From: Mytilus californianus
Taxonomy: Eukaryota
Reading direction: 5' to 3'
Assembly (NCBI RefSeq): GCF_021869535.1
Contig: NW_026262734.1
Location: forward strand, 47,554,001 to 47,618,000
DNA length: 64,000 bases
In this document: positions 2,571 to 16,169 of the stretch, one piece after another
Layout: each line of letters starts with the position of its first letter
Position numbering within the stretch: the stretch's first letter is position 1
Position numbers and translations under genes: made by a program
Notes under the pieces: generated by a model
Databases searched by the model: none
What the model was told of the DNA's origin: nothing
The model's input: only the letters and a program-made list of their open reading frames with translations

Positions 2571-3084
2571 CCTCATTGTTGTCGGTCGTACAGCTGCAAA
2601 TGATTGCTTACATCCACTTCGTTTGAACTTTGAAGGATAGTTGTCTCATTAGCAATCATACCACATCTCCTTGTTTTTATATAACTTCCCTTCCCAGTTC
2701 AATATATTGCTTGTGTTAATGTTTCATTCCAATCATGCAAAAAAAAATCAAGTGAGAATAATCCTACAACCATTTATAAAAAAAAGAATAAGGATAAGCG
2801 AATAAGGAACGAATAAGTAACAGGGCATCCGTCAAGCGCGGAAACGGGTACATACGCGCTAATAGGACAATTTCACCGCTACGAACTAAGAACTAACACC
2901 AGAGAAAAGAACAGAAAAGAAAGCATTAAACAGGTGCAGCGTATAAAAGGCGAATAAGGAACAAATAACTAGCGAATAAGTAACAAGGTATCAGTCGAGC
3001 GTTGAAACTGGTACATATGCGCTAACGGGCTTATTCTAACTCCGCAAAAACAGAACTAACACCAAAGACATGAAAAGAACTAAA

Positions 3085-9000: not shown

Positions 9001-9866
9001 AATGTCCCGATAGTATCTAAAGAGTTAAAGGACTGGCATTTAAAATCTGTGCTGTTTGTCATATTTTCAGTTGGAACCGGAAAGCTTTTTTCATGACTTG
9101 ACTGTTGAGATCAAATCGTAATTTTATTGGGCACTGTAAACATATTCTAAAGTATACAATTTATTTGCTTACTGCAGGAGTGTAGTTGACTGAAAAGTGG
9201 GAGGGGGACTTACGTCTGAACGGGACAGGAGAGACAAAAATAAGTTTTTTTCAGTTTAAGTGTCTATGAATTAGGCAGTGGCCTCTTTCATTTTCATTAC
9301 AAAATTCTTCTAAAATAAGGAGGGGCAGTCCCCCATTAACAAATTTGAATAGTAAACAATTTATTCAAACACCTGATTTATTAAAACAGGATGAACATGT
9401 ACATGGAGTTAGAAAGGTTCAAGTAACTTTCTTATTGTGTATCTCCAAACATTTAAGCGTATTATTACATCTTTATAAATACTGTATGTTGCCCTCTAAA
9501 TGTCATTGTAATTTTTGTTGTTGCGTTGATGTCCAATATAAAAGTCATTGAAGTATAACCCATATCTCTTTTTATTCATTTTAAACTAGTCATTTTTTTA
9601 CAACACCTGAAATTCTTCTTAACCAAATATCTTTGTCCTACGAAGCATCCAGGTCTTCTACCTATTCAAATAATAAAGCTTTATGCAAAGAGGTAACACA
9701 GCCGCCGGACTAAAACGTCTCACATTCTGAGCAAGACCATCAGGACATCAAAGAAAACAAAAACATGGACAAAACAAGGAATTTTGACCTAAATATTAGC
9801 CTTTATTTCACAAAATATACCAAATATAGTTACCCTTTTACTCATAAGTATATATATATATATATA

Positions 9867-11359
9867 TGTAAACCTCAGATCTGTGTACGGCCTCAAATCT
9901 GTGTTCGTTTCTCAAATATGTGCCTTATCGTGAAGTCAATCGCTAATCTATGTCCGTTAAAAAAGATACGGCCTCAAATCTGTGTCCTTTTTTCAAATTT
10001 GTTTTCAATCGTGACGTCATTCGCAAATCTATAGATATAAGAAGATGTGGTATGAGTGCCAATGAGACAACTCTCCATCCAAGTCAAAATTTATAAAAGT
10101 AAACCATTATAGGTCACAGTACGGTCTTCAACACGGAGCCTTGGCTCACACCGAACAGTAAGCTATAAAGGGCCCCAAATAATTACTAGTGTAAAACCAT
10201 TCAAACGGGAAAACCAACGGTCTAATCTATATAAAAAACGAGAAACGAGAAACACTTATGAACCACATCAACAAACGACAACTACTGAACATCAGATTCC
10301 TGACTTAGGACAGGTGCAAACAAATGCAGCGGGTTTAAACGTTTAATGGTACCAAACCTTCACCCTTTTTCTGAAACATGTTCGTTTAAAAGATACGGCC
10401 TCAAATCTGTGTTCTTTTCTTAAATCTTTTTCCAGTTTGTTTCGCCATGCGCAAATTTATGCCAGTCTAATAAGTACGGCCTTAAAGGATTTTTGTTTTA
10501 TTAAGTCATTTCCCATAATTCAATGTTAAGTTGGGATGTGTTCTCCATGTGTGTGCTTAAAAAATTTACATGCGTGTGTAATTATTGTATGATTTACATT
10601 TTATTGTAAAACTACAACATTTTCAAATTGTTTGCTTTCCTTATCCCTTGTTTAATTGTTCTGTAGTAATTATCGTTACTTCCCTTTACTCATTACGTCT
10701 TGATAACAAATACGAAATATAAGTTAATAAACAACCTGAGACAAAATGACATCTGTATACAAGCAACTAAAGATACATGTATGGCCTTCAACAATGAATT
10801 GAACCTATTCTGTATCGTAATCCGTAAACACATACACCTATTTGTTCAATGTTTCAATGTATAGGTACCACATAAAAATGTTTAGGGTATAATTTATTGC
10901 CGGTTTAACAACGACATTTTGTGCCACTATCTTATTAAAAAAGGTTTTTTTCTGGTGAAACTATTCCGGTTTCGAATCTATGTATTTTTTAAAAATCCAT
11001 TGTGTACCATGACATCAACATTCAACATCCACAACATAATTCTGTGTACAAATTATTCGCATAACGAGCATATATGTTATTTTATTAATGTGCCTTCAAG
11101 AATGAAACTACACATATTTTTTTACTTGATTACGTCTTGCTATGTCTTACGTCACCACATTTCGATAAAGGACATAGATTTGTGACAAAAATGGCCATAG
11201 ATTTGAGTTAATAAAGGACATAGATTTGAGACAATAAAAGACATAGATTTGAGACAATACAGGACATAAATTTGGAACGTATATGACGCAATATTAAAAA
11301 GGACATAGATTTGCGGAAAAGACATAGATTTGAGGCTGGACATAGATTTGAGGCTTACA
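9867..11359. mobile_element. Foldback-like non-autonomous DNA transposon (~1.5 kb) whose arms are tandem caaatct(a/g)tgtcc / ggacatagatttg motifs, inserted in a TA run
   Basis: Left tgtaaacctcagatctgtg is the near reverse complement of right catagatttgaggcttaca; (TA)n on both flanks; interrupted at ~10031-10378. Confidence 0.7.
10031..10378 (-). mobile_element. Retro-tail repeat (related subfamily) nested in the foldback element
   Basis: agatataagaagatgtggtatgagtgccaatgagacaactctc...gattcctgacttaggacaggtgc...gggtttaaac (reverse of the family core). Confidence 0.75.
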
Positions 11360-11456
11360 TATGTATATATAAACAAGTCTAAATTGAAAACAACGTTCAA
11401 ACCTATATATATATTATTAAATTAATATGGCCTTCCAAATACCGTTTCGATTCCTA

Positions 11457-11500
11457 ACATCACTGAAGAGACATTACTTGTCGAAATCCGGATATGGTGT
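11457..11500 (+). ncRNA. Minimal type I hammerhead ribozyme, copy 1
   Basis: Stem I acatca/tggtgt; CTGAAGA 11463-69; stem II GAC-attactt-GTC; GAAA 11483-86; palindromic stem III TCCGGA; cleavage triplet AUA, predicted cut after 11494. Confidence 0.82.
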
Positions 11501-11995
11501 ACAAATTTTTGCACCTCATGTTTGCGGTATACCATCTTTTCCGCAAGTTTATTGTTTTCTGTTTGGTATTAAATTAATATAATTAAGATCCATTGTGTTA
11601 CATCTGTGATCCGTTTATTTGGCAATCGCCATGGCAGTCAGCAGGGTTTAAGAACATCCGTTGTTCGACCTGCTAGTCAAATGCGTTTTGTTAAAATATA
11701 CTTTTTCACTTTTTTGGTCTTTTGGAAAATGTTGTTTGTGCTGTATTTAGACCCCTCTACAAAGAAATTTGTTTTGCATGCACACGTATAAAAATTGCGG
11801 TTTTTATCCAACGCAATCATAGGTTTGAACGTTGTTTTCAATTTAGACTTGTTTATATTTTTTCGTTTGGGCTTGTATTATATTTGCCTTTGGGTTTATA
11901 TGATCCGTTCATCCTATTTCGACTCTTCAAAATTCAAGAGTCAATCCCAAATTGAGGTAAATTATATGGTCTTCCAAATACCGTTTCGATTCCTA

Positions 11996-12039
11996 ACATC
12001 ACTGAAGAGACATTACTTGTCGAAATCCGGATATGGTGT
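11996..12039 (+). ncRNA. Minimal type I hammerhead ribozyme, copy 2 (identical)
   Basis: Same sequence 539 bp downstream; CTGAAGA at 12002-12008; predicted cut after 12033. Confidence 0.82.
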
Positions 12040-12539
12040 ACAAATTTTTGCACCTCATGTTTGCGGTATACCATCTTTTCCGCAAGTTTATTGTTTTCTG
12101 TTTGGTATTAAATTAATATAATTAAGATCCATTGTGTTACATCTGTGATCCGTTTATTTGGCAATCGCCATGGCAGTCAGCAGGGTTTAAGAACATCCGT
12201 TGTTCGACCTGCTAGTCAAATGCGTTTTGTTAAAATATACTTTTTCACTTTTTTGGTCTTTTGGAAAATGTTGTTTGTGCTGTATTTAGACCCCTTTACA
12301 AAGAAATTTGTTTTGCATGCACACGTATAAAAATTGCGGTTTTTATCTATATATATATATATATGAGTGAAAAAAAAAACTTAACATTTTTTAAAGTTTT
12401 ATACACATAGTTTACGCTGTCGCCGCCAGATAGTAATCCCTATGTCTCACAATCTGTAGGAGAGACAAAAATGAACAAGGAAGACAAAGTGTGTCATTTC
12501 TCTGCTTGACAATTGATTCATTGCAGTTCAAGAGACAAA

Positions 12540-12905
12540 CTTAGGGGGGGGGGGGGGGGGGGGGGCGGGGGGGCTGTGATCACGCTAACATGTTTAACCC
12601 CGCCACATTCTGTATGTATGTGCCTGTCCCAAGTCAGGAGCCTGTAATTCAGTGGTTGTCGTTTGTTTATGTGTTACATATTTGTTTTCCGTTCATTTTT
12701 TTGTACATAAATTAGGCCGTTAGTTTTCTCGTTTGAATTGTTTTACATTTTCATTTCGGGGCCTTTTATAGCTGACTGTGCGGTATGGGCTTTGCTCATT
12801 GTTGAAGGCCGTATGGTGACCTATAGTTGTTAAATTCTGTGTCATTTGGTCTCTTGTGGAGAGTTGTCTCATTGGCAATCATACCACATCTTCTTTTTTA
12901 TATTG
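12540..12905 (+). mobile_element. Dispersed retro-tail repeat, well-preserved copy beginning with a long G run
   Basis: ttagggg...catgtttaaccccgccacattctg...ctcattggcaatcataccacatcttctt. Confidence 0.82.
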
Positions 12906-13269
12906 TTCCTCATGTGTGGGCAATTTTGTACTACTTTGTTATGATCACACGTACTATGATACATGTAACACATTGGTTAACTGATATGATGTATGTGTCT
13001 CAACTTATGAGAGATTTTTCTTGGTCTCAGATCTCAAGATATCAGAATAGTGAATATAACATGCGGCAAGTGATGGTAACAGCTCACTTAACCCATAGGA
13101 TCCGGTCGGCTAAAAAATACTTTAAATGTGAATGTAGTTTTAAGTTACATTTGTATATTGTTTTGGTAAATCAAGTACAATTGTTTGTGGTGTGAGCAAA
13201 TATTGTAAATATGGTGCTTCTGTTCATATATAAAAGATTATATTGCCATTTTAACTGTCTGCATATACA

Positions 13270-13982
13270 TACATGTACAGAATATAGGAGATATTCACAG
13301 GTACAAAATATAGGAGATATTCACATGTATACAATATATGAGATATTAACATGTACACAATATAGGAGATATTCACAGGTACAAAATATAGGAGATGTTC
13401 ACATTGTACACAATATAGGAGATATTCACAGGTACAAAATATAGGAGATGTTCACATGTACACAATATAGGAGATATTCACAGGTACAAAATATAGGAGA
13501 TGTTCACATGTACACAATATAGGAGATATTCACAGGTACAAAATATAGGAGATGTTCACATGTACACAATATAGGAGATGTTCACAGGTACAAAATATAG
13601 GAGATATTCACATGTATACAATATATGAGATATTAACATGTACACAATATAGGAGATATTCACAGGTACAAAATATAGGAGATGTTCACATGTACACAAT
13701 ATAGGAGATGTTCACAGGTACAAAATATAGGAGATGTTCACATTGTACACAATATAGGAGATATTCACAGGTACAAAATATAGGAGATGTTCACATTGTA
13801 CACAATATAGGAGATGTTCACAGGTACAAAATATAGGAGATGTTCACATGTACACAATATAGGAGATATTAACATGTACACAATATAGGAGATATTCACA
13901 TGTACACAGTATAGGAGATATTCACATGTACACAATATAGGAGATATTCACATATGCATGTACACAATATAGGAGATTTTCA
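13270..13982. repeat. Minisatellite, ~26-bp unit (tacacaatataggagatattcacatg), ~27 copies
   Basis: Direct tandem repetition without spacers; alternating cagg/catg and gatat/gatgt variants. Confidence 0.95.
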
Positions 13983-16169
13983 ACATAAACTACAATTTAT
14001 TTATTTAGGCTCTTACACCACAGTGACATCTTTCCAAAATGAGCTGTTACTGAAGAGTTGTGAAAAAAACCGTTCCATTCGCCTGGTTTTCTGGTTCAAA
14101 TAACGACTGGGAAACTCTTTGACTAACTTATTGTTGCCTTATGGCACGTTCAACATATAACTGATGAGCAGCAATTTTTCGTCAAAAATACAACAGCTTT
14201 ATTCTTTGTGATCTAAAATGTGCAGAGGAGTGGAAAGTCCAACTTCAGTTTAATACACTCCTTTACATTACTTTGAATATTAAAGCCCTATTTTCCCATT
14301 TCCGTCATTGATACGGAAACATAAGATCATCATGTAGACCTTAACTTGTAAACATCTCATGGAAACTAGATTGATTAAATGTGTCTTTATCGGGATTTAA
14401 AAACAAGGGCTGACCTCTACGCCCCACCTGAGTTCGCCGCTGGCAACCAAACATTTCAGAGTATCTGTTGGTTTTTGATATAAATAATATGTATCATTTC
14501 ATTGCATATTTATTTATTTGATGACCAAACTCATATTTTACAATCTAATCAAAAAAGGGAAAATGCAGTAAAAAAATAACTTGTGTTTTATACTGTGAAT
14601 TTGCTTTGATAACTTTACAAGTCGATTGGTAGGATTTAGTGATTTGAGAACTTGAATAACACATTTGATTAAGAGTAAATCAATCCATATACATTTATTC
14701 TGAAAATGTTGTTGGTGTTGTTGCCAGGTGGTTGATAAAGATGCCCAAGGTGAGTCAAGAAACTTGTGTGAAGCTAGCCGTCGATAACAGTCGGCGTTAA
14801 TATTCATGAGGCCAGCCTTCAATAATATTCATGAGCCGTCAATAATATTTATGAGCCGTCAATAATATTCATGAGATGACTTGCGTTCGATGAAGTGTTG
14901 TAAGAAACAATGATAGATTATTATGATTAAATAACGTTTTTTGTTTATATTTGATATTGTTTCAAACGGGCAAGTCAATGGGTGTCTTCTTCGAGGTCCG
15001 CGTTTACTTAATCAATTATAAAACAGGAACTATTGGTCTACTGCAAGGTCTGCGTCTTTTAACAACATTTAAAATTCACACTAGTGCCTTTTCACCCATT
15101 TTTTCAATTTCCAAATTTTCTGCGTCTGGTTTCTTCCTACACATCAAAATCTGCTTCTGTAGACAAGGAAAGAATATCAACAGACTAAGCACCTGGAATG
15201 TCAATTTAGATATTAAAATAATTTTCAGAACATTGCCTACTTCATTATAAAATCTGTACAATGTCCAAGAGAAAAGTAATTAGAAACATGAAGTACAAAG
15301 CATGGCCAAGATCAATTTTTATTATTACTATTCAGTACCTATCCAAAGCCCATTTCAATTAAGATATAATTTTCTTGTTAAAATCATCCAAATATACATT
15401 CGACTCGCTCGGCTCGTCTATATATTATATAGTTTTCAGGAATTACGCCCTATTAAAAAATCCCTGATCCGTCCCTGTTACTGACACTACTAGAGAAAAT
15501 TTATAACTTGATCATTTCCTGTGTTAGATCAAGGATTTTTCATAGTAAGACTTATACAACTGGTTCCAGTTCCATGTTGTAGTCTGATTGGTCTTCAAAC
15601 AACGATACCACAGGACAGCAAACTATGGATTTATCACCGATGTCCAAGTCTTATGTAGGCCGTTAGCTAGGACGATTCTTATTGGTCGATATAAATTCTG
15701 TGGGAGGTCAATTGTTACGTGAGTGTCAGATCTTCGACGAGTAAGTGAGTTACACTATATCTGAATTTGAATTAGATTGGTTTTGATTTATCAGAGACAT
15801 ATATACACATGTGTATATATGTCTCTGGATTTATCAACACATTTCGAAGTTGCTGATATTAGTTTAGAAGTGTTTATACAATGTATATAAAATGTATAAT
15901 TTGTATACTATCTTGTGTCAATTTAAAGTTCTAAAAAGTTTGTATAAAATTCAAGATTAATGGCATATTTTTATTCATATTAACCAAATTATTACTATAC
16001 TTCATCCATAGATTTCATAGTGTTAGTCCATAGAATGCTTATCATGCTTATTTATTTCACTTGCTTGATTATTGTACCACAAGATAAATATATGTTGATA
16101 CCTGTAAATTCATGAAAAAAAAAAAACAAAAACAAAAAAACAAAAAAAAAACAAAAAAAAACAAAAAAA

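What the first reader, a model, noticed from the sequence alone, without database searches (positions are those of the whole stretch)
11367..12347. Young tandem unit with two intact minimal hammerhead ribozymes: candidate 539-nt circRNA (retrozyme) or Penelope pseudo-LTR
Seen in sequence: a 539-bp period direct repeat whose copies differ by only a couple of substitutions that I could see. Each unit has a complete type I hammerhead (stem I acatca/tggtgt, CUGAAGA, GAC/GUC stem II, GAAA, palindromic TCCGGA stem III, AUA site), and a 40-bp inverted partial copy precedes the pair. Established: minimal hammerheads with a palindromic stem III occur in Penelope pseudo-LTRs and in tandem metazoan retrozymes and are thought to cleave as dimers. 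Inference: a plus-strand transcript could pair the two TCCGGA palindromes in cis, cut after 11494 and 12033, and release a 539-nt monomer able to circularise. The class is known, but this family and its AUA triplet may be uncharacterised.
Basis: partly seen in the sequence, partly recalled or inferred. Interest (0 to 1): 0.78.

Follow-up and report, generated by a model that had tools for sequence, protein, structure and literature searches.

The report
Young mussel hammerhead retrozyme insertion
This is one recent 1.7-unit insertion of a very abundant, non-coding 539-base jumping repeat of a mussel genome. Each unit carries a hammerhead self-cutting RNA motif, so it is a real but ordinary new family of an already known class (animal retrozymes).

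Summary
Window 11420-12347 is 1.72 tandem units of a 539-bp repeat, with 2 substitutions in 389 nt. Each unit carries a complete type I hammerhead (11457-11500 and 11996-12039; predicted cuts after 11494 and 12033). A perfect 40-nt inverted piece precedes them.

It is a non-coding retrozyme-type element, not the pseudo-LTR of a coding Penelope element. The genome holds about 14,000 such hammerheads, against none for a reversed control. They sit in dispersed arrays of 2 to 45 units.

In 24 arrays the 3' end is fixed at unit position 439, the 5' ends vary, and both ends abut (TA)n. Short 3'-end "tails" and inverted copies are common, as at Penelope-like insertions. The window's inverted 40-mer is exactly that 3' terminus. 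An uninterrupted paralogue of the target site lies at 9836-9922.

Plus-strand RNA exists. Cleavage and circles are not shown, and the reverse-transcriptase partner was not identified.

The hammerhead differs from the published Mytilus retrozyme (AUA rather than GUC triplet, different helices). I file it as a new member of a known kind. This scan had already reported the same family on other DNA (s1-318079, s1-340017, s1-320579).

The parts
11367..11406 (-). Inverted 40-nt copy of the family's canonical 3' terminus (unit positions 400-439), a 'tail' at the 5' side of the insertion
   Evidence: 100% complementary to 11819-11858 (I4). Unit 439 is the 3' end of 17 of 24 arrays. Similar tails occur in direct orientation upstream of L031 and L034 and downstream of L040.
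11407..11423 (.). TA-rich junction, a remnant of the target (TA)n tract between the tail and unit 1
   Evidence: Sequence. 5' junctions of most arrays abut (TA)n.
11420..11958 (+). Unit 1 of the 539-bp retrozyme family; homology to unit 2 starts at about 11426
   Evidence: It is 98-100% identical to units in arrays on many contigs.
11457..11500 (+). Hammerhead ribozyme copy 1 (type I); predicted cleavage between 11494 and 11495
   Evidence: Sequence parse. Dimer fold. 9,009 exact 44-mers of the major loop variant in the genome.
11495..12033 (+). Predicted 539-nt monomer released by cleavage at both hammerheads; a candidate circRNA
   Evidence: Inference from the two cut sites. Fold energy -117.4 kcal/mol, z = -1.77 against shuffles. 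Junction-spanning RNA reads exist but cannot distinguish circle from tandem.
11959..12347 (+). Unit 2, truncated at unit position 389 (a non-canonical 3' end) next to (TA)n
   Evidence: The end ...TTTTTATC is followed by (TA)n.
11996..12039 (+). Hammerhead ribozyme copy 2; predicted cleavage between 12033 and 12034
12348..12365 (.). (TA)n remnant of the target microsatellite at the 3' junction
9836..9922 (-). Inverted paralogue of the uninterrupted target site (host repeat with a (TA)n tract)
   Evidence: rc(9700-10060) aligns colinearly across the join of 11150-11366 and 12348-12500 (I2 and I6). Hence 11367-12347 is one inserted block.

Best explanation
Window 11367-12347 is one recent insertion of a non-autonomous, non-coding retroelement of the animal (non-LTR) retrozyme class. 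The family has a 539-nt unit and about 12,000-14,000 units in this 1.65-Gb mussel genome. Proposed cycle: arrays are transcribed on the plus strand. Two neighbouring hammerheads pair through their self-complementary AUCCGGAU helix III and cut after A75 of each unit, releasing 539-nt monomers. A host RNA ligase circularises these monomers. A Penelope-like RT/endonuclease supplied in trans then copies the RNA at a nicked (TA)n microsatellite. Priming uses microhomology with the unit's ...UUUAUAU (position 439). Copying runs more than once round, giving 5'-truncated multi-unit arrays, short 3'-end tails and inverted partial copies. Shown here: the anatomy, the copy number, the insertion scars, the target, the homogeneity of arrays and plus-strand RNA. 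Inferred: cleavage, circularisation, rolling-circle copying and the identity of the RT. In this copy the main cDNA started at a non-canonical site (unit 389). A second, inverted priming event left the canonical terminal 40 nt at the other side.
For: Family and youth: 166 scored matches of 1,355 candidates at 98-100% identity, in arrays on many contigs. Hammerhead abundance and integrity: 14,076 motif hits against 0 for the control. Exact 35-mer 10,193. With the 13 core positions freed the count is 11,986, so 85% of cores are intact (1.24% change per site). With the 7 loop-2 positions freed the count is 12,334 (2.69% per site). The window's loop-2 variant lineage (ATTACTT) has 135 units at 20 or more loci, so loop variants still propagate. 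Retrotransposition scars: in 24 arrays the 3' end is at unit 439 in 17. The 5' ends are scattered (36 to 505), and none lies at the cut site. About 19 of 21 3' junctions and about 16 of 20 5' junctions abut (TA)n. Tails and adjacent inverted copies are frequent. These match the PLE hallmarks listed in PMC8557442. The empty-site paralogue shows the whole block is an insertion. Arrays are born homogeneous: within-array divergence is 0-1.8% (mean 0.93%) against 1.35% between arrays, and private variants are fixed in every unit of L035, L039, L050, L051 and L053. Non-coding: longest ATG ORF in a trimer is 73 aa; GC 34.7%. Dimeric ribozyme: two 48-nt copies fold to a double hammerhead at -26.7 kcal/mol against 2 x -9.1 for the monomer optimum, and the active monomer fold is only -3.1. 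RNA: covered in four RNA runs. In two stranded runs first mates on the minus strand outnumber those on the plus strand about 5-40 fold, which implies plus-polarity RNA under the usual protocol. Reads run from unit 439 into (TA)n. In another species label the hammerhead module and the 3' module stay alignable while other segments are replaced. Machinery: intact PLEs (RVT_1 plus C-terminal GIY-YIG, 755-aa ORFs, tandem copies) are present, and some end in (TA)n. Class precedent: PMC7229834 and bioRxiv 10.64898/2026.07.22.740005.
Against: No Rfam hammerhead hit even at E<=10. No excess of RNA ends at the predicted cut site. In the 621-nt dimeric transcript the double-hammerhead fold lies 11.4 kcal/mol above the optimum, and the cis helix III has only about 0.2 pairing probability. 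The AUA triplet is described as slow in minimal trans-acting constructs (PMC3138052). Within the family, stem variants are mostly disruptive singletons, with one compensatory GAU/AUC case, so there is no covariation support inside the family. The monomer is only mildly more structured than shuffles (z = -1.77). No sequence homology to the one PLE family I could examine, so the partner is unknown. The RNA evidence concerns the family, not this locus: about 93% of reads carry the major loop variant, not the window's.
Confidence: 0.8

Rival explanations
1. Same element and same PLE-type insertion, but the template is a long uncleaved multimeric transcript of an existing array. There is no circle, and the hammerhead is dispensable for transposition or only trims transcripts.
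For: No RNA ends at the cut site. Reads run through array ends into (TA)n. The active fold is not the thermodynamic optimum. PLEs themselves need more-than-unit templates (PMC4209133 discussion).
Against: Private variants fixed in all units of short young arrays are most simply produced by copying a single unit repeatedly. 85% of cores are intact, with loop 2 twice as variable. The hammerhead module is kept in a diverged relative. Circles are shown for another Mytilus retrozyme family (PMC7229834).
Confidence: 0.15
2. An ordinary dispersed satellite. The arrays spread by DNA-level processes (unequal exchange, eccDNA re-insertion at fragile (TA)n sites), and the hammerhead is a functionless relic.
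For: Tandem organisation. Some long arrays (45 units). Sub-array duplications in L034 and L040. No direct proof of cleavage.
Against: The asymmetry of ends (fixed 3' end at unit 439, scattered 5' ends) is the signature of target-primed reverse transcription, not of DNA re-insertion. The RNA is strand-specific. The core is intact in 85% of copies. There are thousands of dispersed short arrays.
Confidence: 0.04
3. Pseudo-LTR of an autonomous Penelope-like element whose ORF has been deleted at this locus.
For: Partial tandem plus an inverted piece, a hammerhead in the repeat and a (TA)n target all resemble PLE copies (PMC8557442). A PLE fragment lies next to a family copy in L059.
Against: None of the 24 arrays has an ORF between units. 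The 539-nt unit is complete and repeats head to tail up to 45 times. The L059 copy is a separate insertion into the (TA)n that follows the PLE's own 3' end. There is no homology with that PLE's 3' UTR. The hammerhead architecture is not the PLE min-HHR type (PMC4209133).
Confidence: 0.01

Closest known systems
Mytilus galloprovincialis non-LTR retrozyme (Mg353; Cervera & de la Pena 2020, PMC7229834)
   Same: Same host group. Both are non-coding AT-rich tandem repeats, each unit with a type I hammerhead that has a short palindromic helix III. Both are dispersed in thousands of copies and transcribed. A circRNA life cycle and PLE mobilisation are proposed for this class.
   Different: The unit is 539 nt rather than 350-390 nt, and the body sequence is unrelated. 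The hammerhead differs: CUGAAGA / GACA..UGUC / AUCCGGAU / AUA here, against CUGAUGA / GUCU..AGAC / ACGCGCGU / GUC in Mg353. The two differ by several pair-preserving changes. Circles are shown by northern blot for Mg353 and not for this family. About 14,000 motifs here, against 2,880 + 1,681 reported there in another assembly.
Min-HHRs in pseudo-LTRs of Penelope-like elements (Cervera & de la Pena 2014, PMC4209133), including the 755-aa PLE of this genome
   Same: Type I core, palindromic 15.2-16.2 region and presumed dimeric action. Also partial tandems, inverted 5'-truncated copies, tails and (TA)n targets at insertions.
   Different: PLE min-HHRs have helix II of 6-8 bp, helix I of 4-5 bp and an extra nucleotide between A9 and 10.1. 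This genome's PLE shows that layout (CUGAUGA-C-GGUGCC..GGCACC-GAAA-CAUG-UC). The 539-nt family has the canonical 6/4/2-bp layout and no ORF.
Newt satellite 2 / axolotl retrozymes (Ax330, Ax353)
   Same: Tandem units whose hammerheads cleave efficiently only as dimers through an extended helix III. A non-GUC triplet also occurs there (GUA in Ax353).
   Different: Vertebrate host, 330-350-nt units and unrelated sequence. Dimer-dependent cleavage and RtcB circularisation are shown experimentally there (PMC7229834). Here they are only predicted.
Vertebrate non-LTR retrozymes as PLE derivatives (Li, Clavereau & Pollet 2026, bioRxiv 10.64898/2026.07.22.740005)
   Same: Tandem hammerhead units with consensus lengths of 51-972 bp, co-occurring with PLEs and interpreted as non-autonomous PLE derivatives.
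   Different: Their link is homology between retrozymes and PLE pLTRs in Xenopus. Here I found no pLTR homology, and the link is through insertion scars and target preference in a mollusc.

Membership tests
Hammerhead ribozyme, type I | Conserved core CUGANGA ... GAAA ... UH | tested here: met
   CUGAAGA, GAAA and U16.1-A17 are present in both copies. The core is intact in 85% of family copies whose surrounding motif is intact.
Hammerhead ribozyme, type I | Three helices around the core with helix I open | tested here: met
   Helix I ACAUCA/UGGUGU (6 bp, one G-U). Helix II GACA/UGUC (4 bp, loop UUACU). Helix III is 2 bp plus a CCGG loop, or an 8-bp AUCCGGAU duplex between two copies. The dimer optimum is the double hammerhead.
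Hammerhead ribozyme, type I | Match to the curated covariance model (Rfam Hammerhead_1 and related) | tested here: not met
   No hammerhead hit at gathering score or at E<=10. A 2-bp helix III is probably penalised by the model (my inference).
Hammerhead ribozyme, type I | Pairings supported by compensatory change | tested here: inconclusive
   Within the family there is one GAU/AUC double change among mostly disruptive singletons. Against the published Mg353 hammerhead, several pairs differ on both sides (1.4/2.4, 10.2/11.2, 10.4/11.4, 15.2/16.2, by eye). Homology of the two motifs is not proven.
Hammerhead ribozyme, type I | Site-specific self-cleavage | not testable with these tools
   No pile-up of RNA ends at 12033|12034 in three raw-read runs. 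This is uninformative for fragmented libraries and for circles.
Animal non-LTR retrozyme | Short non-coding tandem units, each with a type I hammerhead, and low GC | tested here: met
   539-nt unit, within the 51-972 bp range of the 2026 preprint and above the 170-400 nt of PMC7229834. GC 34.7%. Longest ATG ORF 73 aa.
Animal non-LTR retrozyme | Dispersed multicopy arrays, from dimers to multimers, that arise by retrotransposition | tested here: met
   Arrays of 2-45 units on many contigs. Fixed 3' end, variable 5' truncation, a (TA)n target and an empty-site paralogue.
Animal non-LTR retrozyme | Expressed as RNA of ribozyme polarity | tested here: met
   coverage in four RNA runs and a strong strand bias in two stranded runs. 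This holds for the family and its relatives, not for this locus specifically.
Animal non-LTR retrozyme | Monomer accumulates as a covalently closed circle | not testable with these tools
   Reads joining 12238 to 11700 are abundant, but the same junction exists in tandem DNA.
Autonomous Penelope-like element (pseudo-LTR) | RT (and GIY-YIG) ORF between the terminal repeats | tested here: not met
   154 nt lie between the repeated parts. No ORF in any of the 24 arrays.
Autonomous Penelope-like element (pseudo-LTR) | Sequence homology of the repeat to a coding PLE's termini | tested here: inconclusive
   No similarity above shuffles to the 3' UTR of the one PLE family retrieved. Other PLE families (911-aa ORF, Naiads) could not be fetched.

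The most novel reading that the evidence does not exclude
The family may be the dominant, so far undescribed hammerhead element of Mytilus genomes. Its insertion scars may be direct genomic evidence, in an invertebrate, for three things. First, retrozyme arrays are made by more-than-unit copying of a single homogeneous template, probably circular. Second, the copying is done by a (TA)n-targeting Penelope-like machinery. Third, priming occurs by microhomology at one defined site of the RNA. The scars are a fixed 3' end at a UAUAU microhomology, scattered 5' ends, tails, inverted twins, and arrays whose private variants are fixed in every unit.
Probability: 0.35. Interest if true: 0.55.

Novelty: new member of a known kind. 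Interest (0 to 1): 0.33.

Why it matters
Retrozymes are the main source of ribozyme-bearing circRNAs in animals, yet how they are copied back into DNA is still a model. This family is large, very young and has sharply defined ends. It therefore offers thousands of readable insertion junctions for working out the priming site, the target choice and the template form. The window's copy is a minimal two-ribozyme unit with an empty-site paralogue beside it, which makes it a convenient construct for cleavage and circularisation tests. As a discovery it is incremental. The class, the dimeric hammerhead and the suspected PLE link are all published, and this scan had already reported the same family elsewhere in the genome.

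Tried and rejected
Rfam at gathering score and at E<=10 gave only chance hits (U6 at E 0.35, a Staphylococcus sRNA), which I rejected.

The partner search found intact PLEs through PF01541. The one family I could read (RVT_1 + GIY-YIG) has its own min-HHR and no homology to the unit. The family copy beside it in L059 is a separate insertion.

The apparent array starts at unit 490 were a BLAST effect of the variable segment 440-489. A more sensitive BLAST extends those arrays.

Tests of ribozyme use gave nothing. No array starts at unit 76, and there is no excess of RNA ends at the cut site.

A literature search for the motif letters found nothing. This is weak evidence, since figures are not indexed.

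ORFs listed use bacterial start codons, are 108 aa or shorter, and were rejected as coding.

Full report
OBSERVATION. The stretch is as described. Window 11420-11958 and 11959-12347 are direct repeats with a 539-bp period. Over the shared 389 nt they differ at two sites: 11431 C against 11970 T, and 11757 C against 12296 T. Each copy holds the same 44-nt motif, at 11457-11500 and 11996-12039. It reads ACAUCA | CUGAAGA | GACA-UUACU-UGUC | GAAA | UCCGGA | UA, then UGGUGU. This has every invariant hammerhead position: C3-A9, G12-A14, A15.1-U16.1 and H17 = A. Helix I is open and 6 bp long, helix II is 4 bp, and helix III can form only 2 bp plus a CCGG loop within one molecule. The predicted scissile bonds are 11494|11495 and 12033|12034. 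The 40 nt at 11367-11406 are a perfect reverse complement of 11819-11858. No Rfam model reports the motif, even at E<=10. It is nonetheless not chance: the degenerate pattern CTGANGAN{9,16}CGAAAYCCGGRTH has 14,076 exact matches in this genome and none for the reversed control.

WHAT IT BELONGS TO. The genome (1.65 Gb, 175 contigs; a mussel by the labels of the runs that hold the sequence) contains the 539-nt unit at 98-100% identity in tandem arrays on many contigs. I cut out 24 arrays with flanks.
- The 3' end is at unit position 439 (...GACTTGTTTATAT) in 17 of them. It nearly always runs straight into (TA)n.
- The 5' ends are scattered (unit 36, 118, 131, 158, 169, 219, 237, 258, 339, 409, 433, 460, 502, 505 and others). 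Most also abut (TA)n, often at TA-like words of the unit.
- None starts at the ribozyme cut site.
- Several arrays carry a 40-50-nt copy of the 3' terminus (unit ~386/400-439) on one side. It is direct upstream of L031 and L034 and direct downstream of L040. Many have an adjacent inverted partial copy (L037, L040, L045, L047, L054).

A fixed 3' end with random 5' truncation is the signature of target-primed reverse transcription. Partial tandems, inverted truncated copies, 30-40-bp tails and a (TA)n bias are the hallmarks listed for Penelope-like elements (PMC8557442). The window's inverted 40-mer is therefore the family's canonical 3' terminus placed in reverse at the 5' side. The main copy ends at a non-canonical site (unit 389, ...TTTTTATC|TATATA).

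The window also contains an inverted paralogue of the host sequence with an uninterrupted (TA)n tract at 9836-9922. It aligns colinearly across the join of 11150-11366 and 12348-12500. The whole block 11367-12347 is thus one insertion.

THE ELEMENT IS NON-CODING AND NOT A PLE pLTR. The unit has 34.7% GC. A trimer has no ATG ORF longer than 73 aa. The ORFs are artefacts of bacterial start codons. No array holds an ORF between units. The genome does hold intact Penelope-like elements. PF01541 finds 1,480 candidates, among them ORFs of 755 and 911 aa and tandem copies 3,927 bp apart. The 755-aa family has RVT_1 plus a C-terminal GIY-YIG domain. About 90 nt before its 3' end it carries its own hammerhead of the published PLE min-HHR type, CUGAUGA-C-GGUGCC..GGCACC-GAAA-CAUG-UC, with the extra nucleotide after A9 (PMC4209133). 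Two of seven copies end in (TA)n. In L059 a 93%-identical copy of the 539-nt family sits in that (TA)n as a separate insertion. The PLE's 3' UTR shows no similarity to the unit above shuffles. Other PLE families could not be fetched. A PLE-type machinery is indicated by the scars and is available in the genome, but the partner is not identified.

THE RIBOZYME. By the criteria of PMC4209133, the layout is the canonical metazoan type I architecture rather than the PLE min-HHR: helix I 6 bp, helix II 4 bp, helix III 1-2 bp with a 2-4-nt palindromic loop.
- Alone, a 48-nt motif prefers an inactive fold (-9.1 kcal/mol) over the catalytic one (-3.1).
- Two copies together fold to a double hammerhead that shares an 8-bp AUCCGGAU helix III, at -26.7 kcal/mol.
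- In the full 621-nt two-ribozyme transcript, this cis pairing has a probability of about 0.2. The complete double-hammerhead fold lies 11.4 kcal/mol above the optimum.

The prediction is a slow or kinetically controlled dimer-dependent cleavage, as published for newt and axolotl repeats and for PLE motifs (PMC7229834, PMC4209133). AUA obeys the NUH rule, but it is rarer than GUC and is reported as slow in minimal trans-acting constructs (PMC3138052).

Across the genome the exact 35-nt motif occurs 10,193 times. Freeing the 13 core positions gives 11,986 (85% intact, 1.24% change per site). Freeing the 7 loop-2 positions gives 12,334 (2.69% per site). The window's loop-2 variant (AUUACUU, against the major AUUAAUU) marks a small lineage of 135 units at 20 or more loci, with arrays of up to 45 units. 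Loop changes are therefore compatible with propagation.

The published M. galloprovincialis retrozyme Mg353 has a different hammerhead: CUGAUGA, GUCU..AGAC, ACGCGCGU and a GUC triplet. It differs from this one by pair-preserving changes in all three helices. Its 350-390-nt body is unrelated.

RNA. One permuted unit (11700-12238) was laid on three raw-read RNA runs and one contig set. All cover it. In the two stranded runs, first mates on the minus strand outnumber those on the plus strand about 5-40 fold. With the usual library chemistry this means RNA of plus (ribozyme) polarity. It cannot be DNA carry-over or random intronic read-through. Those two runs carry another species label and match at 90-95%, and only in two modules: unit 533-83 (the hammerhead) and unit 192-442 (up to the 3' terminus). 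The ribozyme and the 3' end are thus the conserved parts of diverged relatives. Reads run from unit 439 into (TA)n in all four runs.

Reads joining the end of the unit to its start are abundant, but they are expected from tandem DNA as well as from circles. No excess of read ends marks the cut site. About 93% of reads carry the major loop variant, so nothing shows that this particular locus is transcribed.

TEMPLATE FORM. Among 87 full units, divergence is 0-1.8% within arrays (mean 0.93%) and 1.35% between arrays. The window's two copies differ by 0.5%. Most variants are private to one unit. Short young arrays also carry private variants present in every one of their units: L035 4/4, L039 3/3, L050 6/6, L051 6/6 and L053 3/3. 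Arrays are therefore born homogeneous. Repeated copying of one unit, as in rolling-circle reverse transcription of a monomeric circle (the model of PMC7229834), explains this most simply. A transcript of an already homogeneous array, or rapid local homogenisation, is not excluded. Longer arrays (L034, L040) also show later internal duplications.

VERDICT. The retrozyme reading is supported, and the coding-PLE pseudo-LTR reading is rejected. Cleavage and circularisation remain predictions. The element is a new family (unit length, body, hammerhead sequence, AUA triplet) of a known class. I found no paper text with the motif, and it is not the family described for Mytilus in 2020. This scan had already reported the same family on other DNA of this genome (s1-318079, s1-340017, s1-320579) with the same conclusion. 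My junction, target and class tests agree with those reports independently. What this window adds:
- a minimal two-ribozyme copy with a non-canonical 3' end and an inverted terminal tail;
- an empty-site paralogue;
- the core-versus-loop counts;
- the array-wide private variants;
- the strand-specific RNA.

Noticed in passing
L060-L066 (G000 PLE copies), oriented positions ~2610-2713: An intact Penelope-like element family (RVT_1 + C-terminal GIY-YIG, 755-aa ORF, tandem period 3,927 bp). About 90 nt before its 3' end it carries a conserved min-HHR with an extra C after A9 and a palindromic CAUG helix III. Some copies end in (TA)n.
   Followed up: partly
L063 (oriented) ~2790-3000: Downstream of a PLE copy lies a repeat whose body resembles the published M. 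galloprovincialis Mg353 retrozyme. Its degenerate hammerhead resembles the 539-nt family's more than Mg353's, which hints at module exchange between retrozyme families.
   Followed up: no
window 13271-13953: A 26-nt tandem array of 26 copies with 88% matches (consensus ACATGTACACAATATAGGAGATATTC).
   Followed up: no
window 10031-10322 (-) and 12612-12903 (+): An inverted pair of a ~290-nt SINE/MITE-like repeat (79-83% identical) flanking the region.
   Followed up: no
window 11165-11355 and 9880-10030: The host sequence around the target site is itself a repeat with 19-23-nt units (GGACATAGATTTGAG) and an internal (TA)n tract. It is present twice in the window, in inverted orientation.
   Followed up: partly
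window 12544-12573: A 30-nt G homopolymer 200 nt downstream of the insertion.
   Followed up: no
window 12016 (loop 2 of hammerhead copy 2): In RNA run X21 about 11 of 156 reads carry the window lineage's C. That lineage makes up about 1% of genomic units (135 of about 12,300). This may mean higher expression per copy of the young lineage, but the numbers are small and the species identity of the run is uncertain.
   Followed up: no
window 11835-11885 (unit 416-466): The canonical 3' terminal motif ...CTTGTTTATAT is followed inside the unit by a degenerate second copy (...CTTGTATTATAT). The segment 440-489 is the most variable part of the unit among subfamilies.
   Followed up: no
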